From assembly GCA_002269645.1 (NCBI GenBank), contig NIVC01001356.1:243381-307380 (forward strand): a DNA stretch of 64,000 bases. Direction: 5' to 3'. This document shows, one piece after another, positions 16,520 to 64,000 of the stretch (position 1 is the first letter of the stretch; the number at the start of each line of letters is the position of its first letter). The position numbers were made by a program, and so were the translations under genes. This DNA is from Macrostomum lignano. Taxonomy: Eukaryota. The notes under the pieces were generated by a model. The model was not told the DNA's origin. It saw nothing but the letters and a program-made list of their open reading frames with translations, and made no database searches.

Positions 16520-17334
16520 TCAGTTTCCCTGAGTCTCAATCGAGCACGCGAGAAGCTGATGCAGCTCGTAAAGGAAATCGAAAGCTACGAACAGACACGG
16601 CTCGGGAAGCGTCTGTGCACCATCGACCGCAGACTCCGCCTTCAACACTTTGCTGCCTGAAGCATCAGCCCAGAAGCCCTTCGTGTTGCTGCAGCATGAA
16701 ACCCAACCAGGCAAACGAGTCCTTGGATCTCGCTGTGGAACTCACAAATGCTCTGCTTCTCGCACAGCTGCATCACGTCCTTGAAATGCCGGTCGATGCT
16801 CAGCTGCAGGTCTCTCAGAGCTCCGCAAACGTCGCCCAGCTTCACTGGTCCTTGTTCGTCTTCGCTAGACACCGCGTCCTCGAGATCGCAGCACTCCAGC
16901 TCCATGCGCGAGGACAGCTCAAGGACGCTTCGAAGGTCGCTGGTGCTTTCCGCCGCTGCTATCGAGCTGTCGAACTTCTGCAGCACTGCAAAGTCGCTCA
17001 GCTTCTGCCTTGCTGCGTCAGTCCTGGCAGTGAGTCGACTCGTCACAGCTTCCTTGTGCTTCATCAGCGACTCAATGGCTTCATTGAGCAGATCCTCAGC
17101 CACCTGTAGCTCTGCTTCCAACACCTGCACGTCCGTTCTTAGACGGTCGCGGACGAGCCTCAGAGGCTGCAGCCTCGCCTCAACTCTGTCATGAATTTCA
17201 CGCACTCTGTCGGAGTCTCGGTCCAGGTGTCTCTGGCACAGAGGCTGCAGTGTCTGAGCTCCGATGCCAGAAGCTGCTTCGTTGCAGGTGGCCAGGGAGC
17301 AGCCCTGACTGCCTGCTTGAGTGGCTTCGGTCAT
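16520..17334 (-). pseudogene. ZnF-coiled-coil-NHL paralog A1 (class A), frameshifted and truncated in propeller blade 1
   Basis: ATG at 17334 (MTEATQ), C-x4-C-x15-C-x2-H, coiled coil; frameshift near 16710; homology stops after LLACSI, next to the Gypsy remnant. Confidence 0.85.
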
Positions 17335-19169
17335 GGCTCTTCTGAGCTGAAGCGGAGAGGTTGGGAGAAGCTGAGAGGCATTGTGAATTATATGCTCAGG
17401 AAATTGCAGAAGCTGCACTTTTACAAGCGTAGTCAGGTGGAGGGGCTCAGAAACTCATCTGGCCTAAAATAATGGGCTGAAGATCTCGTTGGAAATACCG
17501 ATCTCTTTCAATCATGACATACTCGTATTTTTTATTTTGTTCCCTACTAAAACTGAACATTCTGTCTCTCTCTCCTGCTGCTGCAGACGTAACTTGATAC
17601 TATGAGAATGAGAATTTTAGAGAAAATCCCATGATTAAACTTTAAATGATGACAGAAAAGTTGCAGTCGTCCTCCTTGCACACTAGTGAGTCTTCAGCAA
17701 AGTTAATTAATAAATATTGGGTTTGCTGCTCGCTAAAGGTTGGTCTGGTGTAGTTATTTAACCACTTAGCATTGATCCAGAACAGAGTAGGATAATCAAT
17801 ACGAATTTATACTGAGAGTCAGTACAGAGTTTAATATAAAACTCTGTACTGAGGTATTAGCTGACCTGCATACAAGAACAATAGTAAGCATTAAAAAGGT
17901 ACATAACTAAAAACATTTTAATCAAGCAATAAAAGTCAAAAGTGCAGTATAATTTGAACTTCTAACTTTTATATAGAATTTGGTGCAAGTAGCTATTTAG
18001 ATCTATTGGATTTTTCACTGATGACTTACTTTGTTTTCATTTTAAAAAACAAGCCACTTTCAATGCTTCAAAACCAGAAAATTTTCCATAAGTGTATTTA
18101 ACTAATTCCTAATTCATTTATGCTTACAGATAAATCGGAAATAAATACTGACCCATCTGTTTGTTCTGAGACACACTAAAACTTTAATACAATAAATTTT
18201 GTTTTTGTGTAAGGGTATTGGTATTGTAATTTTTACATTTGAATTGTAAGTTGAAGCAAGTTTACAGATTTATTGCAATTATTTGCATTTTGAAAATAAG
18301 TTAATTAAAAGCAAAGCTTATGCGTTGGATTGTGTCTGAGTCTGAGTTTTCTCTCTATTTGTTCCAAATTATAATTCGATTCATAACGCAGTCAAAGGTA
18401 AGGTAAGGTATATAAAACTTAATATTATTGTTCGGAATAAGTAATGGTATGCATGTCAGCATCGACACGTCGTATTGGCTATTTATTTTAGTTAGCAACG
18501 CGCATACTGCTTCCTTTAATATTCGCTCGTACATAGCCGTCTTTTCGAGTAAATATATAAATAAAACCACGACTAAGGTTTCAAGTTAAGCGCGTGCGCA
18601 ACATACACTAATGAAAACAGTGAATAAGTAAAACAAAAAATGATTATATATCGTTAATGTCTGTTAGTTCTTCAAGAGAGGTACAAGTGTAGCAATATAT
18701 TATTTTACTACCAGCAAATATAATTGAACGATACTCTTTAAAATACCTTTACAGTGCACTAACACTAACAAGGCAGAAGGCTTGGCTGCATGTGTGTGTT
18801 AAGAAATCGAACAAACACTTGAATGCTCATTTGTATGTGAAACTGGAGGATGTGCATGTACAATTGAATTTCCGTCTAATATGGTCGTTGTCGAGCTAGA
18901 TGTACATGTACACGTAATCCAATTCCTGCCAGTGAAATATATTTATTTGTTTGTACATGTACCCGTGGCAGTGAGCAGGGCCGTGTGGCCGGGACGGAGG
19001 GGTGAGCTTCTGCCGGGGCCGCCAAAAGCGAACCGACCAGCCCGCCGGCAGCATGGCCCCGCGTCTACGTCAGCAGCACGAACCTCAATTTCTGCAACGA
19101 GAGTAATACAACCTACGTTCGACAACGGGCGGTGGGCCCAAGTCATCGACATCCATGCACAATCGCATC

Positions 19170-19380
19170 GCCTGCTGGACTGCTATTCACAGTCACGGAC
19201 TGGCGAGTGTGGGACGAGGACTCGCTCTCGGACCATCGTTTTATCCTCTTTTGCATCGGGCTGACCAAGCAAAAGCCGAAGGTCACCTGGAGCCGGAACT
19301 TCAGGAATACCCAAGCGATCAACGAGTTTAAAAGTCAAGTCAGAGGGCCAAGACGGCCGGCCACCATGTGGCGCCAATAG
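19170..19380 (+). mobile_element. Non-LTR retrotransposon APE-endonuclease fragment (R1/LOA-like)
   Basis: Translates to VTDWRVWDEDSLSDHRFILFCI...RNFRNT; SDH is the catalytic C-terminal APE motif. Duplicated at 49563-49765. Confidence 0.65.
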
Positions 19381-22286: not shown

Positions 22287-23855
22287 ATGGCCGAAGCCAC
22301 TCAAGCAGGCAGTCAGCGCTGCTCCCTGGACACCTGCAGCGAAGCAGCTGCTGGCACTGGAGCTCAGACACCGCAGTCTCTGTGCCAGAGACACCTGGAC
22401 CAAGACTCCGACAGAGTGCACGAAATTCAAGCCAGAGTTCAGGCGAGGCTGCAGCCTCTGAGGCTCGTTCGCGACCGTCTAAGAATGGACGTGCAGGTGC
22501 TGGAAACGGAGCTGCAGGTAGCTGAGGATCTGCTCAATGCCGCCATTGAGTCATTGATGAAGCACAAGGAAGCTGTGACGAGTCGACTCAATACCAGAGC
22601 TGACGCAGCAAGGCAGAAGCTGAGCGACTTTGCAGTGCTGCAGGAGTTCGACAGCTCGATAGCAGCGGCGGAAAGCGCCAACAATCTTCGAGGCGTCTTT
22701 GAGCTGTCCTCTCGCATGGAGCTACAGTGCAGCGATCTCGAGAATGCGGTGTCTGGTGGAGACAAACAAGGACCAGTGAAGCTGGGCGACGTTTGCGGAG
22801 CTCTGAGAGACCTGCAGCTGAGCATCGAATGGCATTTTACGGACGTGATGCAGCTGTGCGACTCAGCTAATCCGCTGAGCGTAGAGAAGCTGAAAATTCG
22901 TAAGTTGCGCAGAGAGATCCAGGGGCTTGATGGTCATCCTGTTTGGGCTTCATACTGCAGCAACACGAAAGGCTTTTCCGCTGATGCTTCAGGCAGCAAA
23001 GTGGTGAAGGCGGAGTCTGCGGTCGATGGTGCACAGATGCTTCCCGAGCCGTGTCTGTTCGTAGCTTTTGATTTGCGATCCGATCTGGATTACCTTCTCG
23101 CGTGTTCGATTGGCAGATCCGTGAGGCTGAAAGTTCAAGCCGACCTCGACTGGTCCACGCCAATCACAGGACTCTGCTGTGACAACGAGCGCCAAGCTCT
23201 GTACATCTCGCAACAAAACTGGGTAAAGATGTCGGACCTGAGCGGTCAGGTGTCGCTCGAGATCAACTCGAGCAGCCTCGGACGGCCTGTCAGATTTATG
23301 GGGCTGACCTGCAGCTCTGACAAGATAATTTCTCTGGACAAAAGCGGCTCGGAAATGCAGCTGCTGTGCATCGACAAAGACAGCGGCCAGCTGCAGACCT
23401 GCGTTTCTCTCGGTGGCGTGCCCAGTTCCCCAGATCGCTCAGAATCCATGTCGGTCATCGACCATGCGGTGCTGATCACCGATTGGGAAGCTGACAAGCT
23501 CTACAAAGTTTGCATCGCCAGCGGTCAGCTGATCTTGACCTACCCGACCAAGCGAAGTCATCGTGATAAGCTTCGAAGTCCTGCAGGAGTCGTGGCTCAT
23601 CGCTCGGGTCTGCTGTTCGTCAGCGAGTGTATAAGTCATGTGGTTCGTGTGATGCGAAGTGACGGCACTGTGCTGCAGACTGTCGGAGTCGAGGGTGAGG
23701 CTGGCAGAGGCCGAGAGAAAATGAACGGTCCGTATGGCTTGGCCATCGTTGAAGGCGACTCCGAGTTTGCCGTGTGCCAGCGGGATGGTCATTCCATAAA
23801 TTTTTACGAATTTTATACTGGTCCTGATGTTCCTGACTTGTGTATTTTGTTGTAG
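22287..23855 (+). CDS. ZnF-coiled-coil-NHL protein A2 (class A, 522 aa), inverted relative to the rest of the array
   Basis: gagccATGG start at 22287 (the track uses an upstream GTG); CSLDTC...LCQRH; coiled coil; six propeller blades including [10 protein letters not shown]...LFVSE and MNGPYGLAI. Confidence 0.85.
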
Positions 23856-24273
23856 AGAGCTGGAGGCTAAAAAGCCTCAATAACCTACCGTAGGCCCGGT
23901 GCGATCGATTAATTTATATTTGTATATAACGGCGACTATGTAATTGAAAATGCGTACATCTGACACCCTGCGACGAAAGTACATTGGATGTAAATTGCAT
24001 GTTTACACCACGAGCATGCATAAGTCATTGCTATACCCTGCTACCAAGCATTAGGCAGTAGGCCCCTGCAATTCTCCCAAACCAGAGAGATTGGATAAAA
24101 ATAATAAACAAAATTTAAACACCCTAAAGCAATCAGGACGACCACAACACGTTCTTTTTGTAGTTGAGCACCCAGCCTTGGGAACCTCCAGGCTGCTGTC
24201 GCGTGGCGATATCACCGCTGGGTAGGCAGCTAGACAGGCTCTGGTAGTGGCAATCTAGTTTGAACAATTTGTA

Positions 24274-24370
24274 GGGCTTGGCCATCGTAGATTCAGAGCT
24301 GCTGCTTGCCTTGTGCCTAGGGGATAGAAATTTGATCAGGTTCTACCGGGTCTCAACTGGTTCTGCCGAT
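24274..24370 (+). pseudogene. Isolated C-terminal (blade 6) fragment of an NHL paralog
   Basis: [32 protein letters not shown] matches the family C-terminus. Confidence 0.7.
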
Positions 24371-25027: not shown

Positions 25028-25061
25028 CATAGATCTTACTGGTATATTTCTAAGATCTATG
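25028..25061. mobile_element. 34-bp TIR mini-element (hAT-like) with 8-bp target-site duplication
   Basis: 11-bp TIRs catagatctta/taagatctatg are flanked by cgtaggac at 25020-25027 and 25062-25069. The paralogous block near 41190 has one cgtaggac and no insert. Confidence 0.65.
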
Positions 25062-26636: not shown

Positions 26637-28178
26637 TCACACATCAGGACCTGCAGTCGAAACTCGGTAAAGACTGATCGAATTTCTATCCGCTAGGCAC
26701 ACCGCTAGAAGCAGCTCTGAATCTCCGTCTAACATGGCCAAGCCATACGGATTGTCCATTTTGTCTCGGCCTCTGCCAGCCTCGCCCTCGACTCCGACAG
26801 TCTGCAGCACAGTGCCGTCACTACGCATCATTCGTACCACATGTCTACCAAACTCGCTGACGAACACCAGACCTAAGCGATGAGCTGCGACTCCTGCAGG
26901 ACTCCAAATCTTATCAAGACGACTTCGCTTGGTCGGGTAGGTCGAGATCAGCTGACCGCTGGCGATGCATACTTTGTACAGCTTGTCAGCTGTCCAATCG
27001 GTGATCAGCACTGCATGGTCGATGACAGACATGGCGTCCAAGTTATCTGTTAAACTGGGCACGCCACCGACAGAAACGCAGGTCTGCAGCTGGCCCCTGT
27101 CTTTGTCGATGCACAGCAGCTGCATTTCCGAGCCGCTTTTGTCCAGAGCAATTATCTTGTCAGAGCTGCAGGTCAGCCCAATAAAAATCACAGGCCGTCC
27201 GAGGCTGCTCGAGTTGATCTCAAGCGACACCTGACCGCTCAGGTCCGACACCTTCACACAGTTTATCTGCGAGACGTACAGAGCTTGGCGCTTGCTGTCA
27301 CAGCTGAGTCCTGTGATTGGCGTTGACAAGTCGAGGCCGGCTTGAACTTTCAGCCTCACGGATCCGTCAATCGAACACGCGAGAAGGTAATCCAGATCGG
27401 ATCCAAAAGTAAAAGCTACGAACAGACACGGCTCGGGAAGCATCTGTGCACCATCGACCGCAGACTCCGCCTTCACCACTTTGCTGCCTGAAGCATCAGG
27501 GGAGAAGCCCTTCGTGTTGCTGCAGCATGAAACCCAAACAGGCGAACTATCGAGTTCTTGGATCTCGCTGTGGAACTCACAAATGCTCTGCTTCTCCTCG
27601 CTCAGCGGACCAACACTCTCGCACAGCTGCATCACATCGCTCAGCTGCCTGTGAATCAGCAGCTGCAAGTCTCTCACGCCTCCGCTCACGTCGCCAATGT
27701 CTCTGCCGACTTGCTCAAAGCTGTCTCTCTTTTCATCCAAGTCGCCGCACTCCGCACTCACTGCAGCTGAGAGTGAGAGCAATGTCTTCAGGTCAGCATT
27801 GGCCTCAGCTTCAGTAAGGCCAATCTCATACTCCTGCAGCACTGACAGCTCATTCAGCTTCTGCAGGCTGCTCTCATGTCTCACAGTCAATCGGTTGAGC
27901 ACAGATTCCTTGTAGGTGAGCAGCGACTCCACAGCCGACTCGAACAGCTGCTCGATGCTCTGCAGCTCGGCTGCCAGCGCTCGCTGATGAACTCGAAGGC
28001 CGTCTCGCAGCCTCTTCAGCGGCTGCAGCTGCTCGAGCGCCTTCTGTGCGAGGTGGCGCACCGCGGCAGCGTCCTGAGCCAGGTGTCTCTCGCACAGTTG
28101 CTCTGAAAGGCGAACGCCGATTCCGGTCGGGGCAGCGCTGCAGCCTCTGATGAAGCAGCTCGTGCTGGAGTCGGACAT
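26637..28178 (-). CDS. ZnF-coiled-coil-NHL protein B1 (class B, 513 aa)
   Basis: Intact ORF: MSDSSTSCFIRGC...LCERH, coiled coil, six-blade propeller ([19 protein letters not shown]). Confidence 0.88.
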   Translation of the reverse strand: MSDSSTSCFIRGCSAAPTGIGVRLSEQLCERHLAQDAAAVRHLAQKALEQLQPLKRLRDGLRVHQRALAAELQSIEQLFESAVESLLTYKESVLNRLTVRHESSLQKLNELSVLQEYEIGLTEAEANADLKTLLSLSAAVSAECGDLDEKRDSFEQVGRDIGDVSGGVRDLQLLIHRQLSDVMQLCESVGPLSEEKQSICEFHSEIQELDSSPVWVSCCSNTKGFSPDASGSKVVKAESAVDGAQMLPEPCLFVAFTFGSDLDYLLACSIDGSVRLKVQAGLDLSTPITGLSCDSKRQALYVSQINCVKVSDLSGQVSLEINSSSLGRPVIFIGLTCSSDKIIALDKSGSEMQLLCIDKDRGQLQTCVSVGGVPSLTDNLDAMSVIDHAVLITDWTADKLYKVCIASGQLISTYPTKRSRLDKIWSPAGVAAHRLGLVFVSEFGRHVVRMMRSDGTVLQTVGVEGEAGRGRDKMDNPYGLAMLDGDSELLLAVCLADRNSISLYRVSTAGPDV

Positions 28179-29805: not shown

Positions 29806-31353
29806 TCAATCGGCCGAAACAGTTGAAACTCTGTAAATACTGATGGACTTTCCTTCCTTCTGGCACACGGCAAGCAGCTCGGAGTCGCCTTCAACGGTGG
29901 CCAAGCCATACGGACAGTTCATTTTGTCTCGGCCGCTGCCAGCCTCATTATCGACTCCGACAGTCTGCAGCACAGTGCCGTCACTACGCATCAAACGAAC
30001 CACATGACTAATGCACTCGCTGACGAACAGCAGACCCGAACGATGAGCTGCGACTCCTGTAGGACTCCAAATCTTATTAAGACGACTTCGGCTTGTAGGG
30101 TAGGTCGAGATCAGCTGACCGCTGGCGATGCACACTTTATAGAGCTTGTCAGCTGTCCAATCAGTGATCAGCACTGCATGGTCGATGCCCGATATGGCTT
30201 CTGAATGATCTGGTGAACTGGGAACCCCACCGACAAAAACGCAGGTCTGCAGCTGGCCGCTGTCTTTGTCGATGCACAGCAGCTGCATTTCCGAGCCGCT
30301 TTTGTCCAGAGCAATTATCTTGTCAGAGCTGCAGGTCAGCCCCATAAATCTGACAGGCCGTCCGAGGCTGCTTGAGTTGATCTCGAGCGACACCTGACCG
30401 CTCAGGTCCGACACCTTGACCACGTTTTTCTGCGAGATGTACAGAGCTTGGCGCTTGCTGTCACAGCTAAGTCCTGTGATTGGCTTGGAGTCGAGGTCGG
30501 CTTGAACTTTTACCCTCACTGATCCGTCAATCGAACACGCGAGAAGGTGATTCAGATTGGAACGCAAATCAAAAGCAACGAACAGACACGGCTCAGGAAG
30601 CATCTGTGCACCATCGACCGCAGACTCCGCCTTCACCACTTTGCTGCCTGAAGCATCAGCGAAGAAGCCCTTCGTGTTGCTGCAGCATGAAATTCGAATA
30701 GGATGACCATCGAGTTCTTGGATCTCGCTGTGGAACTCACAAATGCTCTGCTTCTGCTCGCTTAACGGACCAGCACTCTCGCACAGCTGCATCACATCGC
30801 TCAGCTGTCTGTCAATCAGCAGCTGTAAGTCCCTCAAAGCTCCGCAAACGTCGCCCAGCTTCAGTCGTCCTTGTTCGTCTCCACCAGACACCGCGTCCTC
30901 GAGATCGCTGCACTGCAGCTCCATGCGAGAGGACAGCTCAAAGACGCCTCGAAAGTCGCTGGCGCTTTCCGCCGCTGCTATCGAGCTGTCGAACTCCTGC
31001 AACACTGCAAAGTCGCTCAGCTTCTGCCTTGCTGCGTCAGTCTTGGCATTGAGTCGACTCATAACAGCTTCCGTGTGCTTCATCAGTGACTCAATGGCGG
31101 CATTGATCAGATCCTCAGCCACCTGCAGCTCCGCTTCCAGCGCCTGCACGTCTGTTCGCAGACGGTCGCGGACGAGCCTTAAGGGCTGCAGCCTCGCCTC
31201 AACTCTGGCGTGAATTTCGCGCACTCTGTCGGAGTCTTGGTCCAGGTGTCTCTGGCACAGAGGCTGCGTTGTCTGAGCTCCGGTGCTAGAAGCTGCTTCG
31301 TTGCAGGTGGCCAGGGAGCAGCGCTGACTGCCTGCTTGAGTGGCTTCGGTCAT
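29806..31353 (-). CDS. ZnF-coiled-coil-NHL protein A3 (class A, 515 aa)
   Basis: Intact ORF from ATG 31353 (MTEATQ); same domain layout. Confidence 0.88.
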   Translation of the reverse strand: MTEATQAGSQRCSLATCNEAASSTGAQTTQPLCQRHLDQDSDRVREIHARVEARLQPLRLVRDRLRTDVQALEAELQVAEDLINAAIESLMKHTEAVMSRLNAKTDAARQKLSDFAVLQEFDSSIAAAESASDFRGVFELSSRMELQCSDLEDAVSGGDEQGRLKLGDVCGALRDLQLLIDRQLSDVMQLCESAGPLSEQKQSICEFHSEIQELDGHPIRISCCSNTKGFFADASGSKVVKAESAVDGAQMLPEPCLFVAFDLRSNLNHLLACSIDGSVRVKVQADLDSKPITGLSCDSKRQALYISQKNVVKVSDLSGQVSLEINSSSLGRPVRFMGLTCSSDKIIALDKSGSEMQLLCIDKDSGQLQTCVFVGGVPSSPDHSEAISGIDHAVLITDWTADKLYKVCIASGQLISTYPTSRSRLNKIWSPTGVAAHRSGLLFVSECISHVVRLMRSDGTVLQTVGVDNEAGSGRDKMNCPYGLATVEGDSELLAVCQKEGKSISIYRVSTVSAD

Positions 31354-34639: not shown

Positions 34640-34795
34640 TGTAGCATTCTTGTAAATAAATAAGAATGATATTGATTGTCCAAGGCTCCAAACTGAGCCA
34701 AAACCAAGAAAACAAGTATCGCCCTCTGGCGCGCACCAGGTCTATTTATAGACTTATCAAAAATGGGGTGGCACAAAGAAAAGTCCACCGTCACA
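34640..34795 (-). repeat. 3' LTR of Gmr1-like element
   Basis: tgtgacggtg...gaatgctaca on the minus strand. Confidence 0.93.
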
Positions 34796-34930
34796 CCCTC
34801 CACCAAAAGATCGAAGCCGGAAAAATCGCAAGCCAAAAATCAATCGCAGGGTCACGCAAAGTTCGGATATGTCTTACAAGAAAACAATGCAAACTTGGCC
34901 ACTAATTACTTTAATAAAAGTTAAATCGCT

Positions 34931-35002
34931 CAGTCAGTCTCTAAATCACTTGGTCAGTCACTAAATCACTTGGTCAGTCACTAAATCACTTGGTCGGTCA
35001 CT
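34931..35002. repeat. 20-bp tandem repeat (ggtcagtcactaaatcactt, about 3.5 units) spanning the pol stop codon
   Basis: Seen directly. Confidence 0.85.
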
Positions 35003-38000
35003 AGCCCAGATCCTGCTGAGACCATCGGCCACCGTGTTGCTTTCGCCTGGCTGGTACTGGATCTCGTAGTCATAGCCGGAAAGATAGAAGGCCCACCGCT
35101 GGAGTCGTGGGTTGGCGTGGTCCATCTGCAGGTACTGCAGCGGCTTATGGTCGGACTTGATGACGAACCGGCGGCCTAGCAGGTAGTGCCGCAGCTTCTC
35201 GACCGCCCAGCGCACGGCGAGGCACTCCTTCTCGATCGTCGCGTAGCTCTGCTCCGCCGAAGTCAGCCGCCGAGATACGAATAGCACGGGATGGATGCCG
35301 TCCTCGAACTCTTGCGTTAGCACCGCGCCGATCCCAGTCTCCGAGCTGTCAGTCTCCAAGGTGAACTGCCGACTGTAGTCCGGCGCGCGCAGCACCGGCT
35401 CGCTCGCCAGCAGAGATTTCACAGTCTCGAAGGCTCGCGTCTGCTGCTCTCCCCAGGCCGCCGTCAGGTCATCGGGTGCCGACTTCTTCGTGAGGTCCGT
35501 CAGGGCCGCCACCTTTTCTGAGTAATCGGGCACGAACCGACGGTAGTGGTTGAGCACTCCGAGCACAGATCGCAGCTGAGCCTTGGTCCGGGGCTGAGCC
35601 AGCGCCGTGATTGTCCGCACTCGGTCCTCGCTTGTACCGATCTCGCCTCCGCCGAGCTTGAAACCCAGGTAGTCAGCAGAGTTGCCGCCCAGGTAGCACT
35701 TTCGGGGTTGCACCGTTAGACCGGCAGCCTTAAGGCGACCGAATACTTCCCTCAGGTCCTCGACGTGCTGCTCGAATGTCGCGCTAAACACGGCGATGTC
35801 ATCGATGTAGGAGTCCGCGTTGTCCAGCCCTTGGAACAGCTTGTCCATGAGCCTCTGGTACGTCGCGCTGCTGCAGTTTAAGCCCATGGGCATCACAGTA
35901 AATTGATACAGCTTGCCGCAGGCCGCGAAAGCCGTCAATCGCTTTGAATCCTCGTACAGTGGAATTTGCCAGTAGCCCTTGCAGCAGTCTAGCTTAGATA
36001 TGAACTTGGCCTTGGCGACCCGCTCCAGTAGGTCCTCGATGTTCTTCATCGGATAGGAGTCGAAGGCCACCAGCTCATTCAGCGCCTTGAAGTTGACAGT
36101 GAACCGGACTGAGCCGTCCTTCTTGGCCACCAGACAGACCGGGGAGCAGTAGTCACTGTCAGATGGTTCGATCACCCCGAGGTCCAGCATGTGTTGAATC
36201 TCCTCTTGGAGCACCTGCCGATGCGCCTGCGGCTCCCGTCGCGGCCGGATGCGCACTACGCGGTCAGATGTCGTCCGGATACGATGCTCCACTAGGTCAG
36301 TCCTCCCCGGGGTCTCGCTGAAGACGCCCGCGAAGTCATGCACCAGCTCCAGGAGACGATCCCTCTCGGCAGGTGTCAGATGATCGGACAACTCAGGAGC
36401 ATTCGTAGCTGCCGCTGGAAGCTGCATCAAAACCGCCTCTCGTGAATTGTACTTCTTAAGCAGGTTGACATGAAACGTGTTTGTCGCAGGGCCCATTTGG
36501 ATCCGGTAGTTCACATTGCTGCACCTCTCCAGTACTTCATAGGGACCGCGCCATTCAGCGTGAAGCTTCTTGGATGACGATGGCAGCAGCAGCAGCACCT
36601 GATCTCCGGGCTGCAACTCTCGTTCCCGCGACTGCCGGTCGTACCAGAGTTTCTGACGCTTCCGTGCTAGCTCTTCGTTGTTCCATGCTGCTTCCTGGCC
36701 AGCCCGCAGTCGGTCTCTCTGGGCCAGCACGAACGAGATGATGTCCTTCTTCTCTTCGGAGAGCTGCTCATCCCAGGTCTGCCGCAGTAGATCTAGCGGT
36801 CCCCGCACAGTGCGTCCATACAAAAGTTCGAATGGGGAGAAGCCAGTTGTTTCGTTGGGCACCTCCCGAATGGCGAACAGCAGATACGGTAGGTACTGGT
36901 CCCACTTCTTTTTCTCGCGAGCTGGTAGTCTCCTCAACATATTCTTGAGAGTGCCGTGGAACCTCTCCACCAACGCCTGGCTTTGCGGATGGTACGGCGT
37001 CGACTGGATGCCCTCGACCCCGGTACACCGGTACAGGGCCTGCAGCAGTGCTGATGAAAAGTTAGTACCCTTATCGCTCTGGATCTCCCTCGGGAATCCG
37101 GTCCTCACGAAGCAGTCCACCAATGCCTTCGCTACGGACTCAGCGTCGATCTTTCGCAGCGGGACTCCTTCGGGGAATCGAGTAGCCGCATCGATAATCG
37201 ACAGGATGTACTGGTGACCACTCGCAGTCCTCGTATACGGTCCACTGATATCGATGATAACTTTGGTGAAGGCCTCCTCCACTCCAGGCACTTGGACTAG
37301 TGGTACCTTGTGATTGCCTGGGACTCGAGCCGTCTTCTGACACTTGTCGCACGTTGCTACGAAGTCCTTCACGTCCTTTGTCATCGTTGGCCACCAGAAT
37401 CGCTGTTCCAGTCGTTGACAAGTCTTCCTTGTTCCCAAGTGGCCAGCGAATGCACTCTCATGGGCCTGGGACAGCGCCGTAGCACGCAGAGCCTTCGGAA
37501 GCACCAGTTGGTCCTCTCCAGCTGCTCGATGCCGAAACAGTCTGCCGCGGCTTTCCTTCACCAAGTCGTTGGTTTGTACCGCTGCTTGCAACTCCTTGTC
37601 GTCTTGTAGGGCCGCCTCGTAGTCCAATTTTATAGGGCGCATTGCAGTTTCTTGTCTCGTTTTGTTGTACTCTTGCCGTTGTTTACGCGCTTGGGCTCTA
37701 GTTATTCTTGATTTTGTTTTGCCAGCCGGCTCCGGATCGATCTGGTTAAGGCCGCTAGCCACGATGCCCTCCGCGAAAAGCCTCTCGTCCCCCTCTGACT
37801 GGGGCATTGGGCGGTGCGGCGCACCCACCCCTTCTCTCTCATTGGCTGAGAGGGGTTGGCCGTGGACCCCCTCGCGCGTCTCTCTGCCAAGCACTGTACT
37901 CGGGGCGTCTCCACCCCCCAACTTGAACTGGCAAATCAAATCCAGTCCAACCAGCGCGCTTACGGGTAGTGAGTCAGCCACACAAACCTCAGTGGTTCTA

Positions 38001-39251: not shown

Positions 39252-39399
39252 TCTTGTAAATAAATAAGAATGATATTGATTGTCCAAGGCTCCAAACTGA
39301 GCCAAAACCAAGAAAACAAGTATCGCCCTCTGGCGCGCACCAGGTCTATTTATAGACTTATCAAAAATGGGGTGGCACAAAGAAAAGTCCACCGTCACA
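39244..39399 (-). repeat. 5' LTR of Gmr1-like element
   Basis: tgtgacggtg...gaatgcaaca on the minus strand. Confidence 0.93.
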
Positions 39400-42809: not shown

Positions 42810-42935
42810 TCACACATCAGGACCTGCAGTCGAAACTCGGTAAAGACTGATCGAATTTCTATTCGCTAGGCACACCGCTAGAAGCAGCTCTGAATCTCTG
42901 TCTAACATGACCAAGCCATACGGATTGTCCATTTT
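42810..42935 (-). pseudogene. Orphan B1-type C-terminal fragment just downstream of B2
   Basis: [39 protein letters not shown] is nearly identical to the B1 end (26637-26760) and has the same 3' flank. Confidence 0.8.
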
Positions 42936-43033
42936 GTCCATTTTGTCCATTTTGCATAAAAATAGTACATTGTGATAAAGCAAAAACATGCAGATTCAGA
43001 GCTGAATCGAAAGGTGATTTACAGTCATCTGTG

Positions 43034-46205: not shown

Positions 46206-47741
46206 TCAATAGGCAGACCCAGTTGACACTCTGTAAAATCTGATGGACTTTCCATTCGGTTGGCAGACGGCAAGCAGCTCTGAGTCGCCTTGAACGATTG
46301 CCAAGCCACATGGATTGTCCATTCTATCTTCGCCACTGCCGGCCTCACCCTCGACTCCAACAGTCTGCAGCACAGTGCCGTTACTTTGCATCACACGAAC
46401 CACATCCCTTAACAACTCGCTGACAAACACCAGACCCGAGCGATGAGCCGCGACTCCTGTAGGACTCAGAAGCTTATCAAGACGACTTCGCTTGGTCGGG
46501 TAGGTCGAGATCAGCTGACCGCTGGCGATGCACACTTTGTAGAGCTTGTCAGCTGTCCAATCGGTGATCAGCACCGCATGGTCATAAAAAGACATGGATT
46601 CTGAGCGATCTGAAAACACAGGCACGTCACTGATAGAAATGCAGGACTGCAGCTGGCCGCTGTCTTTGTCGATGCACAGCAGCTGCATTTCCGAGCCGCT
46701 TTTGTCCAGAGCAATTATCTTGTCAGAGCTGCAGGTCAGTCCCATAAATCTGACAGGCCGTCCGATGCTGCTCGACTCCATCTCAAGCGATACCTGACCG
46801 CTCAGGTCCGACGCCTTCACCCAGTTTTTTTGCGAGATGTACAGAGCTTGGCGCTTGCTGTCACAGCAAAGTCCTGTGATTGGCTTGGACCAGTCGAGGT
46901 CGGCTTGAACTTTCAGCCTCACGGATCCGTCAATCGAACACGCGAGAAGGTAATCCAAATCATCAAACGATACGACCAGACACAGCTCGGGAAGCATCTG
47001 TGCCGCATCGACTGCAGGCTCCGCCTTCACCACTTTGCTGCCTGAAGCATCAGCGGAGAAGCCCTTCGTGTTGCTGGAGCATGAAATTAATTTAGGTTTA
47101 CCATTGAGTTCTTGGATCTCGCTGTGAAACTCACAAATGTTCAGCTCGCTCAGCAGACCAGCTGACTCGCACAGCTTCATTGCATCCTCAAAATGCCTGT
47201 CGATGCTCAGCTGCAAGTCTCTCAGAGCTCCGCAAACGTCGCCCAGCTTCACTTGTCCTTGTTCGTCTTCGCTAGACACCGCGTCCTCGAGATCGCAGCA
47301 CTCCAGCTCCATGCGCGAGGACAGCTCAAGGGCGCCTCGAAGGTCGCTGGCGCTTTCCGCCGCTGCTATCGAGCTGTCGAACTCCTGCAGCACTGCAAAG
47401 TCGCTCAGCTTCTGCCTTGCTGCGTCAGTTCTGGCAGTGAGTCGACTCGTCACAGCTTCCTTGTGCTTCATCAGCGACTCAATGGCGGCATTGAGCAGAT
47501 CCTCAGCCACCTGTAGCTCTGCTTCCAACACCTGCACGTCCATTCTTAGACGGTCGCGGACGAGCCTCAGAGGCTGCAGCCTCGCCTCAACTCTGTCATG
47601 AATTTCACGCACTCTGTCGGAGTCTCGGTCCAGGTGTCTCTGGCACAGAGGCTGCGGTGTCTGAGCTCCGATGCCAGAAGCTGCTTCGTTGCAGGTGGCC
47701 AGGGAGCAGCCCTGACTGCCTGCTTGAGTGGCTTCGGTCAT
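46206..47741 (-). CDS. ZnF-coiled-coil-NHL protein A4 (class A, 511 aa)
   Basis: Intact ORF from ATG 47741; same domain layout; N-terminal half nearly identical to A1. Confidence 0.88.
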   Translation of the reverse strand: MTEATQAGSQGCSLATCNEAASGIGAQTPQPLCQRHLDRDSDRVREIHDRVEARLQPLRLVRDRLRMDVQVLEAELQVAEDLLNAAIESLMKHKEAVTSRLTARTDAARQKLSDFAVLQEFDSSIAAAESASDLRGALELSSRMELECCDLEDAVSSEDEQGQVKLGDVCGALRDLQLSIDRHFEDAMKLCESAGLLSELNICEFHSEIQELNGKPKLISCSSNTKGFSADASGSKVVKAEPAVDAAQMLPELCLVVSFDDLDYLLACSIDGSVRLKVQADLDWSKPITGLCCDSKRQALYISQKNWVKASDLSGQVSLEMESSSIGRPVRFMGLTCSSDKIIALDKSGSEMQLLCIDKDSGQLQSCISISDVPVFSDRSESMSFYDHAVLITDWTADKLYKVCIASGQLISTYPTKRSRLDKLLSPTGVAAHRSGLVFVSELLRDVVRVMQSNGTVLQTVGVEGEAGSGEDRMDNPCGLAIVQGDSELLAVCQPNGKSIRFYRVSTGSAY

Positions 47742-56588: not shown

Positions 56589-58124
56589 TCACACAGCAGA
56601 ACCAGTTGAAACTCGGTAAAGACTGATGGAATCTCTATTCGGTTGGCACACGGCAAGCAGCTCGGAGTGGCCTTCAACGATGGCCAAGCCACACGGATTG
56701 TGCATTCTGTCCCCGCAACTGCCAGCCTCACCCTCGACTCCGACAGTCTGCAGCACAGTGCCGTCACTACGCATCATTCGTACCACATGCCTATCAAACT
56801 CGCTGACGAACAACAGACCTAAGCGATGAGCTGCGACTCCTGCAGGACTCTGAAGCTCATCAAGACGACTTCGCTTGGTCGGGTAGGTCGAGATCAGCTG
56901 ACCGCTGGCGATGCACACTTTGTAGAGCTTTTGAGCTTCATAATCAGTGATCAGCACCGCATGGTCAATGACCGATGTGGATTCGTAGAAGTTATTAATA
57001 GAAGGCACGCAACCGACGAAAATGCAGGTCTGCAGCTGGCCGCTGTCTTTGTCGATGCACAGCAGCTGCATTTCCGAGCCGCTTTTGTCCAGAGCAATTA
57101 TCTTGTCAGAGCTGCAGGTCAGCCCCATAAATCTGACAGACCGTACGCCGAGGCTGCTCGAGTTGAACTCGAGTGAAACCTGACCGCTCAGGTCCGACAC
57201 CTTGACCACGTTTTTCTGCGAGATGTACAGAGCTTGGCGCTTGCTGTCACAGCTGAGTCCTGTGATTAGCTTGGACCAGTCGAGGTCAACCCGAACTTTC
57301 AGCCTCACGGATCCGTCAATCGAACACGCGAGAAAATAATGTAGTTTTGATAGTGGATAAAAAGCTACAAACAGACACGGCTCGGGAAGCATCTGTGCAC
57401 CATCGACCGCAGACTCCGCCTTCACCACTTTGCTGCCTGAAGCATCAGGGGAGAAGCCCTTCGTGTTGCTGCAGCATGAAACCCAATCAGGCGAACCATC
57501 GAGTCCCTGGATCTCGCTGTGGAACTCACAAATGCTCTGCTTCTCGCTCAGCGGACCAACACTCTCGCACAGCTGCATCACATCGCTCAGCTGCCTGTCA
57601 ATCAGCAGCTGCAAGTCTCTCACGCCTCCGCTCACGTCGCCAATGTCTCTGCCGACTTGCTCAAAGCTGTCTCTCTTTTCATCCAAGTCGCCGCACTCCG
57701 CACTCACTGCAGCTGAGAGTGAGAGCAATGTCTTCAGGTCAGCATTGGCCTCAGCTTCAGTAAGGCCAATCTCATACTCCTGCAGCACTGACAGCTCATT
57801 CAGCTTTTGCAGGCTGCTCTCATGTCTCACAGTCAATCGGTTGAGCACAGATTCCTTGTAGGTGAGCAGCGACTCCACAGCCGACTCGAACAGCTGCTCG
57901 ACGCTCTGCAGCTCGGCTGCTAGCGCTCGCTGATGAACTCGAAGGCCGTCTCGCAGACTCTTCAGCGGCTGCAGCTGCTCGAGCGCCTTCTGTGCGAGGT
58001 GGCGCACCGCGGCAGCGTCCTGAGCCAGGTGTCTTTCGCACAGGGGCTCTGGGAGGCGAACGCCGGTGCCGGTCGGGACAGCGCTGCAGCCTCTGATGAA
58101 GCAGCTCGGGCTCGAGTCAGACAT
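56589..58124 (-). CDS. ZnF-coiled-coil-NHL protein B3 (class B, 511 aa)
   Basis: Intact [16 protein letters not shown]...LCERH; six-blade propeller. Confidence 0.88.
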
Positions 58125-59844
58125 TGTGCTTGAAGAATGGCGCTGAAAATTTGCAAAATCGTTTTGATACTTTGAATGCGCCTGGCTAAAATGCTTTTAT
58201 AGTTGTTTCGAGCACGACCAGCTTAGTGACTTTTACAACACAGGAAGGGGATGTCAGCTTAGTCGAAATACCAGAGCAGATTCTGCTCTGAATCCCATCT
58301 GATTGTGTAGAGTATCATTAATTAAAAAATGCTACTATTAGTACAATAATGCAAACATGAGGAGCAAAACTTAATCTATGAGCTAAGTTACTATTTTTAT
58401 CGAAAACTATGAAACATCTATTTATAACAAAAAGAGGAATTGTGTACGATATACACGATATATACCGAAAGGATGGTTTAGGTTGCTATTTATATTTCGC
58501 AAAACTTGTCTATAAATACAAGCGAAAAATCCGAGCTGAAATCTCAGACTCGGAGCAGCCTCGACTTGAGCACACCCAGGAACTACGAGGCTACATGTAC
58601 ATCTCTGAGAGAAGTAGATGCCGTTCGGTAAGCCTTTGTTCAAGTTTTCGTTATTTGATTATTGAGAGCGATTTTATTGACGGCCGTTACTGTTCAGTTG
58701 AATTTACTGAATTTTTTTGAATTTGAGGCCTCCCTATTCCTAAGGGATTGGATAGGATCTGCGGACCGATTCCAATACCCTTAGAGGATTATCAATTGAT
58801 GATTTTGGTACCCTAGAGTAACCGATAGGGGCAACGACTCCGATTCCGTTATTTAAAGAAGAAGACGCCCTTTCTTGAGAACCTCGAATCTGTGTTTAAA
58901 AAGAAATTTGTCAAACAGCAGCACAACAGTAACAGCTCTGAAAGCTTCTTTATTTCACGCAACATATTGGCAGCTGCCGGTAAAAGTAAACGCAATTGTT
59001 ATCTAAAGTACGTTACTACTAAAATATCAATAAAACCAACTGCAAGACAGCAGAAACCGGTACATTAGCTTGGCTGGTACATATTTGGAAGTTTTAAAAT
59101 TCAATAAAAGCTATCACAGATATTATCAGGACTCATAAAGCCTCCAATATTAGATGAGACAGATGAGTAGAAATGCATGCAATTGAGCACTGTCAAGCAT
59201 CAGATTTGCAACAACTCACATGGTAAAGTCAAACACTTGAGAATGCTTTGAGTCTGAACAGAACAGATACAAATCATATTTTATTGGAGCACGGCTTAAC
59301 AAATAAACTCTAACAGCAACTTTGAGTAGCCTCAAGCGGCAGAAGCTCTGATGAGACAAAAATCTGGTGCCAGCATTCATGTTTAGAATGTCACCTGATT
59401 ATTCGCTTATTCTTCACTTATTCACGAAGGTAGCCAGAATAACCTGGTAGTTTAGAAGTTAAACCCACAGATGAACCTCCTAATCAATCATAATCACAGA
59501 TTAACTCTACTAGCAGATTGGTGTCACCTCAGTTTGTGAGAGGAAAACCAAATCAACGCGCCAATGTAAAGTCTGCTAACAGAATTCACGAAAATTGGCT
59601 GCGGTATGTCAAAGTGCCGCAGATGCTTCGAGTTTGTAACTGAAATTCTGAAATTTGGCAAAGCATAACAATTTCGTAAAGCAGATCCATTTAAAAATCA
59701 AAGACGAGCTCATTTTCTATTCTGTGCTCACAAGCTGCGGTAAAAAAGCTCCAATTAATTGGTCCAGCATGCAGATTATAAAAATAAAAATTTGTGATTC
59801 AGCAAAAACATGGCGATAACAGGTAAATTCACAATCATCCGCCG

Positions 59845-61378: not shown

Positions 61379-62884
61379 TGTGCTTGAAGAATGGCGTTGA
61401 AAATGTGCAAAAAGTTTTCAATATATCGAATGCGCCAGGCTAAAATATTCATTATTGTTTTGATAGAAAATGGATCAGCTGCGGGAGACACTGCATCAGC
61501 ATTGCGCAGGACCAGCTCAGGGACTTTTACAACACCGAAAAAAGATGTCAGCTTAGTCGAACTACCGAGCGGATTCTGTGCCGAATCCCATCGGATTGGC
61601 CACCGAGGTCGCAGAGTCATAGAAAATCCCAGGTCTCAGCCTCAGTAGGTTAATTGGGGAGAACATAAGAAATCTTAAGTATCTGAGAGCTTGAGTTTTT
61701 TTAATTTACCTCATCAAATGATGCCTTCAGCTTAGCTCAGTCTTGAGGGGTTTCGGATCTACTCAGCTGGCACTTGTTGCTCTGTCTGATGCTGATTGCA
61801 TGATCGTGTTTAAAATGAATTTTGTCGAACAGAATCACAACAATAACAGCTCTGCAAACTGATGTATTTGAGGCAACATTGGCTGCTGCTGGTAAAAGTA
61901 CACGCAGTTGTTAGCTAAAGTACACCACTAGTCACAAAAAATCAATAAAACCCAACTGCAAGACAGCAGAAACCGGTACATTAGCTTGGCTGGTAAAGAT
62001 TTGGAAGTTTTAAAATTCAATAAAAGTTATCACAGATGTCATCAGGACTCATAAAAACCTTCAAGATTCGTTTGCTCGTAGTACAGATGAGTAGCAATGC
62101 ATGCAATTGAGCACTGATCAGGCATCAGATTAGCAACAACTCACATGGTGCAGTCAAACACATGAGAATGCTTTGAGTCAAACTGTCTGAGCTGAATTAA
62201 AAAGACGTCAAACAAAGCCTTACGAAGCTGGCAGCCTTGGTTCTTCATCAGAGCAGCGCCTGAACTGCGCTGAGTTCGTCGGCAAATCAGATGATGTTTG
62301 AGCTCGGCCTAACAAATAAAATCACACAGCCAAAATCTAGAGCCAGCATTCATGTCCGGAATGCCACCTGATTTACTCGCTAATTCAACACTCATTCACC
62401 AGGTAGCCAGAAGAACTTAGCTGCCACCAAGTTAAACTCCCAAATGAAACGCCCATTCATATTCAAGCAAAATCTAAATTTAATAATCAAATAATCAAAA
62501 TTTGATTATTTATAATAATTAATAAATCTAAATCTAAATCAGCAACAGCGAACAACTTTGTAACAGCGAAACCATATCAACGCCTAAATGCAAAATCTGC
62601 AACCAAATTTCACCAAGTTTTGGACTGAAATTCTCAAAATTGGTGAAACACATCCATTTAAAAGTCAAAGACGAACTCATTTTCTCTGCTGAAGTCATGG
62701 TTAAGGTAAAAATCCGCTTTGTTATACAAAATTACTGCTGTTACCAGGCACAAATTCTAAAACTATAATGGTCAAGCTTCAATTCATGTGTCAAAACACG
62801 CAGAGCATAAAAATAGTACATTTTGATAAAGCAAAAACATGCAGATGCAGAGCTGAATCGAAAGGTGATTTACAGTCATTTGTG

Positions 62885-64000
62885 TCACGGCAGAACCATT
62901 TGAAACTCGGTAAAATCTGATGGACAGTCCTTCCTGCTGGCACACGGCAAGCAGCTCTGAGTCGCCTTCGACGGTGCCCAAGACACACGGACAGTGCATT
63001 TTGTCTCGGCCTCTGCCAGCCTCGCCCTCGACTCCGACAGTCTGCAGCACAGTGCCGTCACTTTGCATCACACGAACCACATGCCTATTATACTCGCTGA
63101 CGAACACCAGACCTGAGCGATGAGCCACAACTCCTGCAGGACTCAGAAGCTCATCAAGACGACTTCGGCTTGTCGGTAGGTCGAGATCAGCTGACCGCTG
63201 ACGATGCACACTTTGTAGATCTTTTTTAGCTGCCCAATCAGTGATTCAGCACCGCATGGTCGATGACCGACATGGATTCGAGCGATCTGGGGAACTGGGC
63301 ACGCCCACCGACAGAACGAGGTCTGCAGCTGGCCCGCTGTCTTTGTCGATGCACAGCAGCTGCATTTCCGAGCCGCTTTTGTCCAGAGCAATTATCTTGT
63401 CAGAGCTGCAGGTCAGCCCCATAAATCTGACAGGCCGTCCGAGGCTGCTCGAGTTGATCTCGAGTGACACCTGACCGCTCAGGTCCGACACCTTGACCAC
63501 GTTTTTCTGCGAGATGTACAGAGCTTGGCGCTTGCTGTCACAGCTGAGTCCTGTGATTGGCGTGAACCAGTCGAGGTCGACTTGAACTTTCAGCCTCACG
63601 GATCCGTCAATCGAACACGCGAGAAGGTAATCCAGATCGGATCGCAAATCAAAAGCTACGAACAGACACGGCTCGGGAAGCATCTGTGCACCATCGACCG
63701 CAGACTCCGCCTTCACCACTTTGCTGCCTGAAGCATCAGCGGAGAAGCCCTTCGTGTTGCTGCAGCATGAAACCCAAGCAGGCGCACCATCGAGTTCTTG
63801 GATCTCGCTGTGGAACTCACAAATGCTCTGCTTCTCCTCTCTCAGCGGACTAACACTCTCGAACAGCTTCATCACGTCCTCGAACTGCCTGTCGATGCTC
63901 AGCTGCAAGTCTCTCAGAGCTCCGCAAACGTCACCCAGCTTCAGTCGTCCTTGTTCGTCTCCACCAGACACACGTTTTCGAGATCGCTGCACTCCAGCTC
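62885..64000 (-). pseudogene. ZnF-coiled-coil-NHL paralog A5 (class A coiled coil), frameshifted, 5' part beyond the window
   Basis: [22 protein letters not shown] class-A segment plus propeller, split over ORFs 63246-63992 and 62784-63209; a 2-nt loss removes the normal stop. Confidence 0.75.

What the first reader, a model, noticed from the sequence alone, without database searches (positions are those of the whole stretch)
16520..64000. Tandem array of RING-less ZnF-coiled-coil-NHL genes: candidate diversified recognition system
At least nine paralogs (A1-A5, B1-B4) plus two orphan fragments span over 47 kb. Five are intact (A2, B1, A3, A4, B3); the rest are truncated or frameshifted. All have an uninterrupted CDS with a zinc finger, coiled coil and six-blade NHL-like propeller (seen). 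TRIM/NHL and related B-box-coiled-coil proteins are known RNA-binding and antiviral/immune factors. Rapid birth and death, TE-rich spacers and patchy hypervariability are typical of immune or allorecognition loci. The function is inferred, not shown.
Basis: partly seen in the sequence, partly recalled or inferred. Interest (0 to 1): 0.82.

Follow-up and report, generated by a model that had tools for sequence, protein, structure and literature searches.

The report
Flatworm tandem array of TRIM-like NHL genes
The window ends in a real tandem array of intronless genes from the flatworm Macrostomum lignano, each encoding a cysteine/histidine motif, a coiled coil and an NHL propeller; the family is large, so far seen almost only in this species and unstudied, and an immune role is possible but not shown.

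Summary
Window 16.5-64 kb carries nine copies of one gene family plus two 38-residue orphan fragments. Five copies are intact, uninterrupted ORFs of 511-522 aa. The window is the last 64 kb of Macrostomum lignano contig NIVC01001356.1, so the contig end cuts the array.

Each protein has an invariant C-x4-C-x15-C-x2-H motif, about 160 residues of long helices and a C-terminal propeller. The propeller best matches the six-bladed NHL domains of TRIM3, TRIM2, Thin and TRIM71. No RING or B-box is detectable.

New findings:
- The array is built of B->A two-gene modules.
- The N-terminal halves form two deep types (40-44% identity). The propeller halves are about 80% identical across both types, which indicates gene conversion or recombination.
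- The propeller core and the coil are under purifying selection (omega about 0.4 and 0.6). Loops assigned to the top face evolve at omega about 1, so positive selection is not demonstrated.
- Every named relative is from M. lignano, often in other tandem arrays.
- Only one of the five intact copies matched an annotated product.

Best reading: a lineage-specific, RING-less TRIM-like NHL family of non-catalytic dimeric binders with an unknown ligand. The immune or allorecognition reading is untested.

The parts
16535..17418 (-). B-type copy fragment (B_16f): 5' leader and codons 1-~300 only, one frame change, no propeller
   Evidence: tblastn. Part of a 3-kb segmental duplicate of 46930-49943 at 94.5% identity.
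22287..23855 (+). B-type intact gene (B_22), 522 aa from Met; the only copy on the + strand
   Evidence: ORF. Met position. Exact product not on record.
24260..24370 (+). Orphan fragment of the last ~38 codons, with a stop, 400 bp downstream of B_22
   Evidence: tblastn
26637..28178 (-). A-type intact gene (A_26), 513 aa; the protein used for the structure models
29806..31353 (-). B-type intact gene (B_29), 515 aa from Met; forms a B->A module with A_26 across a 1.6-kb spacer
34640..39399 (-). LTR retrotransposon inserted in the spacer: gag, then pol with PR-IN-RT-RNaseH order, and 156-nt direct repeats 99% identical
   Evidence: Pfam; repeats
42813..42938 (-). Orphan fragment of the last ~40 codons, 100 bp downstream of A_43p
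43034..44511 (-). A-type copy (A_43p) split into two ORFs by one frame change near codons 160-167 (the alignment suggests a ~55-nt deletion); the propeller half is still an open 329-aa ORF
46206..47741 (-). B-type intact gene (B_46), 511 aa from Met; forms a B->A module with A_43p
56589..58124 (-). A-type intact gene (A_56), 511 aa; the only copy whose product matched a record among the called genes of the assembly (P0001)
58143..58149 (-). 'ttttcag' splice-acceptor-like site 18 nt upstream of the A_56 ATG. The product P0001 begins exactly after its AG. Conserved in A_26 and A_43p, mutated in A_59p.
   Evidence: annotation method in PMC5730564
59848..61378 (-). A-type copy (A_59p) with several frame changes and stops; the sister contig still shows one stop and one frameshift
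62886..64000 (-). B-type copy (X_62), codons ~155 to the end, cut by the contig end, one stop. Its counterpart on contig NIVC01004574.1 is the intact, annotated 516-aa P0002.

Best explanation
This is a Macrostomum-lineage expansion of TRIM-like genes derived from the TRIM-NHL group. The genes have lost the RING and any recognisable B-box. They keep a single Cys3-His knuckle, a TRIM-style long helical hairpin and an NHL propeller.

Shown:
- The genes are intronless within the CDS and sit in head-to-tail B->A modules about 5 kb long that have been duplicated segmentally.
- The N-terminal halves and 5' flanks form two old lineages, A and B. The propeller halves are exchanged among all copies of the array.
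- The fold is kept by purifying selection, while the loops assigned to the top face change at about the neutral rate.

Inferred mechanism: the protein dimerises through the coiled coil, as TRIMs do, and presents two propellers. These bind a ligand (protein or RNA) on the variable top face. With no RING it has no ubiquitin-ligase activity of its own. It would therefore act as a binder or adaptor, as the RING-less relative Brat does in translational repression.

Also inferred: at least some copies are expressed as SL trans-spliced mRNAs, possibly cut from multi-gene transcription units. The biological process is unknown. An immune or conflict role is one possibility, not the default.
For: - Organism and contig.
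- Copy map.
- Fold. Sequence match to the Thin, TRIM71 and TRIM2 NHL domains.
- CCCH motif, with the three Cys invariant and the His nearly so, in 18 divergent members.
- Module structure and segmental duplicates.
- Mosaic ancestry: the N-half and 5' flank of A and B differ at 42% of nucleotides but by only 1-15% within a type, while the C-half differs by 5-17% with no A/B structure. At protein level A and B are 40-44% identical in the N-half and 78-83% in the C-half. The A N-half is closer (51%) to genes of another array than to its B neighbours.
- Selection.
- Family restricted to M. lignano among named hits, 24 representatives at E < 1e-30, with gene names that place several members in one transcription unit.
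- A second array with the same birth-and-death pattern.
- The annotation is transcript-based and cuts transcription units at trans-splice sites (PMC5730564). P0001 starts exactly after a conserved 'ttttcag'.
- TRIM-like proteins that lack part of the RBCC signature, including Brat, are classed with TRIM2/3/32/71 (PMC3503706).
Against: - Dimerisation, ligand binding and zinc binding are all inferred.
- The N-terminal model has low confidence (pLDDT 45-70).
- The propeller is acidic overall (pI 5.0-6.0, net charge -4 to -9). That does not favour RNA binding of the Brat or LIN-41 kind.
- The top/bottom loop assignment comes from strand order, not from coordinates.
- Only one of five intact ORFs matched a called product.
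- The excess of change in top loops is weaker and non-significant in the second array.
- Relatives in other Macrostomum species could not be sampled properly, so 'lineage-specific' may mean the genus or order rather than the species.
Confidence: 0.6

Rival explanations
1. One reading: the array is a diversified innate-immune, antiviral or allorecognition receptor system. Propeller variants recognise different non-self ligands and are kept diverse by selection.
For: - Tandem birth-and-death array.
- A large lineage-specific family in several arrays.
- Amino-acid changes concentrate in loops assigned to the ligand-binding face: omega 1.5 in B-C loops and 0.9 in D-A loops against 0.4 in the core, Fisher p = 8e-5.
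- Exchange of propeller segments among copies would shuffle variants.
Against: - Omega in the top loops is not above 1 (p = 0.4-0.9). Top against bottom loops gives p = 0.053, and the second array shows no significant effect.
- The within-array propellers are about 80% identical, so diversity is modest.
- Gene conversion here homogenises as much as it diversifies.
- There is no expression, challenge or polymorphism evidence, and no paper mentions the family.
Confidence: 0.17
2. The genes are Brat/LIN-41-like RNA-binding post-transcriptional regulators. They would have expanded for germline or stem-cell (neoblast) programmes, with no role in conflict.
For: - The closest solved folds and sequences are RNA-binding TRIM-NHL propellers (TRIM71/LIN-41, Brat, TRIM2/3, Mei-P26, NHL-2).
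- A RING-less TRIM-like precedent exists in Brat (PMC3503706).
Against: - The propeller is acidic and its putative top loops carry about zero net charge.
- Six relatives' gene IDs were searched in the supplements of the neoblast/germline re-analysis; the only hit was another gene of a shared transcription unit, not a family member. Those files were cut when stored, so this is weak evidence.
- Fast turnover and pseudogenes are unusual for core developmental regulators.
Confidence: 0.15
3. The array is mostly redundant or decaying duplicated DNA in a recently duplicated, repeat-rich and redundantly assembled genome. On this view most copies have no function.
For: - Four of nine copies are disrupted or truncated.
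- Only one of the five intact ORFs matched a called product.
- Overall dN/dS is 0.45-0.7.
- The assembly is known to be redundant (PMC5730564), and a sister contig duplicates the last 5.5 kb.
Against: - Five ORFs of about 515 codons stay open at dS of about 0.2.
- The core and the coil are significantly below neutrality.
- The CCCH motif and the fold are kept in members down to 19% identity.
- An environmental contig carries a full-length member at 34% identity.
Confidence: 0.06
4. The gene is cargo of a transposon or virus and is copied along with it.
For: - The CDS is intronless and multi-copy, and retroelements lie nearby.
Against: - Homology between copies ends within 0.1-2 kb of the CDS.
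- The search for direct repeats, run only on the 31.4-43.1 kb spacer, found just the LTRs of the separate retroelement; no inverted-repeat search was run.
- No transposase, RT or capsid ORF is linked to the modules.
- The copies are arranged in local tandem, not dispersed.
Confidence: 0.02

Closest known systems
TRIM-NHL proteins (class VII / subfamily C: TRIM2, TRIM3, TRIM32/Thin/Abba, TRIM71/LIN-41, Mei-P26, NHL-2)
   Same: A C-terminal NHL propeller, which gives the best fold matches (TMt 0.73-0.78) and the only significant sequence matches. A long helical region lies N-terminal of it, and a Cys/His motif directly precedes the helix.
   Different: No RING, no recognisable B-box and no filamin domain. 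The CDS is intronless. There are tens of copies in tandem arrays instead of a few conserved single-copy genes. No orthologues were found outside Macrostomum.
Brat (Drosophila), listed as a TRIM-like protein lacking part of the RBCC signature (PMC3503706)
   Same: A RING-less coiled-coil plus NHL architecture, hence a non-catalytic binder. The Brat NHL domain is among the fold matches (TMt 0.72-0.75).
   Different: From general knowledge, Brat keeps two B-boxes and has a basic RNA-binding top surface. Here there is only a Cys3-His knuckle, and the propeller is acidic. Brat is a conserved single-copy developmental regulator.
NHLRC1/Malin (RING plus six NHL repeats, no B-box; PMC3503706)
   Same: A TRIM-derived protein that lost part of the N-terminal signature but kept the NHL propeller.
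   Different: Malin keeps the RING and lacks the coiled coil. This family is the reverse.
Tandemly expanded vertebrate TRIM clusters (primate TRIM5/6/22/34, fish finTRIM; PMC3137616 for fish)
   Same: Lineage-specific tandem arrays with birth and death of copies, and variable loops on the C-terminal ligand-binding domain.
   Different: Those clusters carry RING and B-box, and their variable domain is B30.2/SPRY. From general knowledge, positive selection is demonstrated there. Here the domain is NHL and positive selection is not demonstrated.

Membership tests
TRIM / RBCC family | N-terminal RING finger (C3HC4, eight zinc ligands) | tested here: not met
   No RING Pfam hit at E <= 1-10. Only four conserved Cys/His lie before the helix. 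The motif matches the spacing of the first half of a RING only.
TRIM / RBCC family | One or two B-box zinc fingers | tested here: not met
   No zf-B_box hit in Pfam even at E <= 10 on the isolated N-termini. A profile of 17 N-termini finds no B-box chain in PDB. Some database names for relatives say 'B box-type' or 'RING-type', but these are automatic labels and were not reproduced here.
TRIM / RBCC family | Coiled coil following the zinc fingers | tested here: met
   AlphaFold2 gives helices at aa 30-126 and 130-188 with moderate confidence (pLDDT 60-70). Only coiled-coil-type weak hits appear in Pfam and PDB. Dimerisation was not tested.
TRIM-NHL (class VII) | C-terminal six-bladed NHL propeller | tested here: met
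   phmmer to the Thin, TRIM71 and TRIM2 NHL domains, E = 6.5e-10 to 5e-4. Foldseek top hits are all TRIM NHL domains, with TMt up to 0.78 at rmsd 3.5 A. Pfam NHL reaches only 13.5-19.8 bits against a cut-off of 20. The blade number is inferred, not counted.
TRIM-NHL (class VII) | Filamin/Ig domain between coiled coil and NHL (present in TRIM2/3/71) | tested here: not met
   No Filamin hit. The aa 189-246 segment holds four short strands of unassigned role.
Diversified immune / allorecognition gene array | Multi-copy tandem locus with gain, loss and pseudogenes | tested here: met
Diversified immune / allorecognition gene array | Positive (diversifying) selection on ligand-contact residues | tested here: inconclusive
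   Top-loop omega is 0.9-1.5. This is above the core (p = 8e-5) but not above 1 (p = 0.4-0.9). It was not replicated in the second array. Recombination confounds the test.
Diversified immune / allorecognition gene array | Induction by, or protection against, pathogens; or polymorphism that controls self/non-self outcome | not testable with these tools
   No expression or population data were available. The literature and supplement searches found no mention of any family member.

The most novel reading that the evidence does not exclude
The paired B and A genes encode two coiled-coil types that share a common, recombining pool of NHL propellers. They are expressed from trans-spliced multi-gene units. 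Together they would form a flatworm-specific combinatorial recognition system against viruses, transposons or non-self, built on an NHL propeller rather than on SPRY, LRR or Ig domains.
Probability: 0.1. Interest if true: 0.8.

Novelty: new variant of a known kind. Interest (0 to 1): 0.45.

Why it matters
Flatworm innate immunity and genome defence are poorly known, and Macrostomum lignano is a transgenic model in which candidates can be tested. This family has tens of members, is unannotated and appears in no paper found here. It shows how a TRIM-NHL gene can be stripped down to knuckle, coil and propeller. It then expanded in arrays in which the two halves of an intronless gene follow different evolutionary histories.

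If the variable propeller face binds fast-evolving ligands, this would be an NHL-based counterpart of the SPRY-based TRIM restriction factors. If not, it is still a clean case of concerted evolution with a breakpoint at a domain boundary. It also warns that frameshifts near the contig ends of this PacBio assembly can mimic pseudogenes.

Tried and rejected
- Pfam on full proteins, isolated N-termini and ten distant members: no RING, B-box or Filamin, and NHL only below threshold.
- PDB profile search with 17 N-termini: only coiled-coil noise, so the finger class stays unassigned.
- hhalign of single blades against each other and against aa 196-246: all probabilities are below 16%, so the blade number could not be settled from sequence. 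Model coordinates are not exposed, so blades could not be counted directly.
- The word-indexed homologue search returned the same 7 proteins twice and is clearly not exhaustive. Taxon range therefore rests on the full HMMER scan.
- Exact-product look-ups for four intact ORFs found nothing. This is weak evidence of non-annotation, because the boundaries must match exactly. One search shows that the look-up fails even for the annotated copy when the start differs.
- Supplements of two M. lignano expression papers and a full-text search for six gene IDs mentioned no family member. The only match was another gene of a shared transcription unit, Mlig001567.g1 = PDCD2.
- Transposon-cargo idea rejected. 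No inverted-repeat search was run, and the direct-repeat search covered only the 31.4-43.1 kb spacer.
- Neutral decay rejected for the intact copies.
- Tandem Repeats Finder found no satellite in the array.


Full report
**Origin of the window.** The window is eukaryotic. Homologues of its long ORFs are 'hypothetical protein BOX15_Mlig...' entries of the free-living flatworm Macrostomum lignano. One window-encoded product (P0001) lies on contig NIVC01001356.1 of assembly GCA_002269645.1. Its distance to the contig end shows that window position 64000 is the end of that 307,380-bp contig. The assembly therefore truncates the array.

**Copy map.** ORF listing and tblastn with the five long ORFs give nine copies and two orphan fragments between 16535 and 64000.
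- Five copies are uninterrupted ORFs from Met to stop: 22287-23855 (+), 26637-28178 (-), 29806-31353 (-), 46206-47741 (-) and 56589-58124 (-). They encode 511-522 aa.
- 16535-17418 (-) holds only the first ~300 codons, with one frame change.
- 43034-44511 (-) has one frame change near codons 160-167.
- 59848-61378 (-) has several frame changes and stops.
- 62886-64000 (-) has one stop and runs off the contig.
- Two fragments of the last ~38 codons lie just downstream of full copies, at 24260-24370 (+) and 42813-42938 (-).

**What the protein is.**
- Pfam gives nothing above threshold. NHL reaches 13.5-19.8 bits against a cut-off of 20, and no RING, B-box or Filamin is found.
- phmmer against PDB sequences aligns aa 390-487 with the NHL repeats of Drosophila Thin (E = 6.5e-10), TRIM71 and TRIM2.
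- AlphaFold2 on a 12-sequence alignment gives two long helices (aa 30-126 and 130-188, pLDDT 60-70) and a beta-propeller at aa 200-506 (pLDDT about 85-93).
- The propeller modelled alone has pLDDT 85 and pTM 0.88.
- Foldseek against PDB ranks the six-bladed NHL domains of TRIM3, TRIM2, Thin, TRIM71 and LIN-41 first (TMt 0.73-0.78, rmsd 3.5-4.4 A), with Brat, Mei-P26 and NHL-2 further down. Seven-bladed WD40 or YncE propellers fit clearly worse (TM 0.5-0.57, rmsd 8-10 A).
- Six NHL-like blades can be laid out on aa 247-506. Four short strands at aa 200-236 remain unassigned.
- Blade-to-blade profile comparison was uninformative.

**The N-terminal motif.** It reads C-x4-C-x15-C-x2-H and directly precedes the helix. 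C8, C13 and C29 are three of only eight invariant columns in an alignment of 18 family members that are 19-67% identical. H32 is nearly invariant. Distant members show C-x2/4-C-x15-17-C-x2-H. This is good evidence for a structural, probably zinc-binding, knuckle. It matches no finger family in Pfam or PDB. 'Zinc finger' is therefore an inference from conservation.

**Family and taxon range.** A full HMMER scan of 1.84 billion representative proteins finds 24 representatives at E < 1e-30. About thirty representatives match the profile end to end. Below these, only generic NHL-repeat proteins match.
- Every named member inspected is from M. lignano.
- Many members share contigs and transcription-unit names, for example Mlig005084.g1/.g6, Mlig012638.g4-g8 and Mlig017974.g1-g5.
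- A second array on NIVC01000989.1 has three full copies, one of them with a stop, plus two fragments on one strand within about 14 kb.
- Three representatives come from JGI environmental samples. One 1.9-kb contig carries a complete 533-aa member with the same motif, coil and propeller at 34% identity. Relatives therefore exist outside the reference strain, from an unknown source.
- No paper mentioning the family was found.

**Organisation of the array.** Self-comparison shows a repeated unit about 4.9 kb long: a B-type gene, a spacer of about 1.6 kb, then an A-type gene, all head to tail on the minus strand.
- The modules are 29806-31531 with 26629-28178, 46206-47923 with 43027-44511, and 62886-64000 with 59848-61378 followed by 56589-58124.
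- One B copy is inverted (22287-23855).
- One truncated B copy belongs to a 3-kb duplicate at 94.5% identity.
- The larger spacers are AT-rich.
- An LTR retroelement with 99% identical 156-nt direct repeats sits at 34640-39399. No other transposon coding sequence was found inside the array.

**Mosaic ancestry.** Pairwise nucleotide distances by segment show two deep types in the 5' flank and codons 1-200. A and B differ at about 42% of sites, against 1-5% within A and 2-15% within B. Codons 201-511 show no A/B structure at all, with 5-17% divergence among all copies.
- At protein level A and B are 40-44% identical in the N-half but 78-83% in the propeller half, which equals A against A (82%).
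- The A N-half is closer (51%) to genes of the other array than to its B neighbours.
- Synonymous divergence follows the same pattern. A/B dS is about 1.1 in the N-half and about 0.2 in the C-half. Within A, dS is 0.05 in the N-half and 0.2 in the C-half.

The two halves therefore have different histories, with a boundary at the coil/propeller junction. The simplest cause is gene conversion or unequal recombination among propeller halves within the array. Short tracts with very low dS (aa 221-250 and 326-370) fit recent conversion. A good part of the 'patchy' variability reflects this mosaic.

**Selection.** Overall dN/dS among the intact copies is 0.45-0.7. I split sites by predicted structure and counted changes against the column consensus in seven sequences.
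- Propeller strands plus bottom loops: omega about 0.4 (84 non-synonymous of 151 changes, p = 1e-7 against neutrality).
- Coil: omega 0.58 (p = 1.5e-5).
- B-C loops: omega 1.47. D-A loops: omega 0.90.
- Top loops against core: Fisher p = 8e-5. The top loops do not differ from neutrality (p = 0.38 and 0.92).
- Of the 18 sites with four or more different residues, 12 lie in loops assigned to the top face.
- Top against bottom loops gives p = 0.053. The second array shows the same direction without significance.

By propeller convention the B-C and D-A loops form the top face, where NHL domains bind ligands. My assignment rests on strand order, not on coordinates. The genes are thus not neutral relics. 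One face is relaxed or diversifying, and positive selection is not demonstrated.

**Expression clues.** The assembly's annotation is transcript-based and cuts transcription units at trans-splice and poly(A) sites (PMC5730564).
- Only A_56 matched a called product (P0001). That product begins six codons upstream of the ATG, exactly after a 'ttttcag' that is conserved in A_26 and A_43p and mutated in A_59p. This fits an SL trans-splice acceptor.
- Exact-product look-ups for the other four intact ORFs found nothing. This test is weak, because the boundaries must match exactly.
- The average M. lignano gene has 4.9 introns, so the intronless CDS is unusual.

**Assembly caveat.** The last 5.5 kb of the window matches contig NIVC01004574.1 with 52 mismatches and 42 mostly one-base gaps in 5463 nt.
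- The last copy differs from the intact, annotated P0002 gene there by 4 substitutions and 9 one-base indels in 1111 nt. Its stop is probably a consensus error or a haplotype difference.
- The neighbouring A copy keeps one stop and one frameshift on the sister contig as well, so it is probably a real pseudogene with fewer lesions than the window suggests.
- On the sister contig no further copy lies within 10 kb beyond the last gene.

**Interpretation.** The family fits the definition of TRIM-like proteins: relatives of TRIMs that lack part of the RING/B-box/coiled-coil signature after duplication and domain loss. That group includes Brat and Malin, next to TRIM2/3/32/71 (PMC3503706). Without a RING, the most likely mode of action is a coiled-coil dimer that presents two NHL propellers as a binding module. 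The ligand is unknown. The acidic propeller (pI 5-6) argues mildly against Brat-like RNA binding. An immune or conflict role is compatible with the array dynamics and the variable face, but no direct evidence supports it.

**Scores.** I rate the structural and evolutionary description as secure, the binding mechanism as plausible, and the immune reading at about one in six.

Noticed in passing
window 58143-58149 (-); equivalent sites upstream of 28178 and 44511: A conserved 'ttttcag' lies 18 nt upstream of the A-type start codons. The called product P0001 starts exactly after its AG, which suggests SL trans-splicing. B-type copies have 'ttctgcag' about 84 nt upstream of their ATG.
   Followed up: partly
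window 58493-64000 versus L003 10433-15950 (contig NIVC01004574.1): A sister contig duplicates the end of the window at about 1% substitutions plus about 0.8% one-base indels. There the last gene copy is intact. This is either assembly redundancy with consensus errors or a second haplotype or homeologue.
   Followed up: yes
window 34640-39399 (-): An LTR retrotransposon with integrase placed before reverse transcriptase (PR-IN-RT-RNaseH order), a SCAN-like gag end, and 156-nt direct repeats 99% identical. It is probably a recent insertion.
   Followed up: partly
window 4190-8113 (+): An intact 1307-aa gypsy-type gag-pol ORF (protease, RT, RNase H, integrase) upstream of the array.
   Followed up: partly
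window 8892-10112 (+): An ORF with an RT-like YIDD motif and a GIY-YIG-like C-terminus, possibly a 5'-truncated Penelope-like element. It has no Pfam hit at E <= 0.001, so this reading is from inspection only.
   Followed up: no
window 12754-13368 and 14219-14728 (+): Two exons of a GT10 alpha-1,3-fucosyltransferase gene (N- and C-terminal Pfam domains) just upstream of the array.
   Followed up: partly
window 3088-4056, 8558-8895, 10830-11255: Long pyrimidine-rich microsatellite tracts. Where an ORF is listed across them (3088-4056, 8484-10112) they read as SIYL or SL repeats. They produce spurious long ORFs and a strong GC/AT skew.
   Followed up: no
L004 (JGI sample 3300040775, contig Ga0450778_159907), 134-1735 (+): An environmental 1.9-kb contig encodes a complete 533-aa family member (34% identity) with the same CCCH motif, coil and propeller in one ORF. 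The source organism is unknown.
   Followed up: partly
L001 (contig NIVC01000989.1), 143-14161 (+): A second tandem array of a sister subfamily (about 53% identity): three full copies, one with a stop, plus two fragments, all on one strand. One member shares a transcription-unit name with a PDCD2 gene (Mlig001567.g1/.g3).
   Followed up: partly
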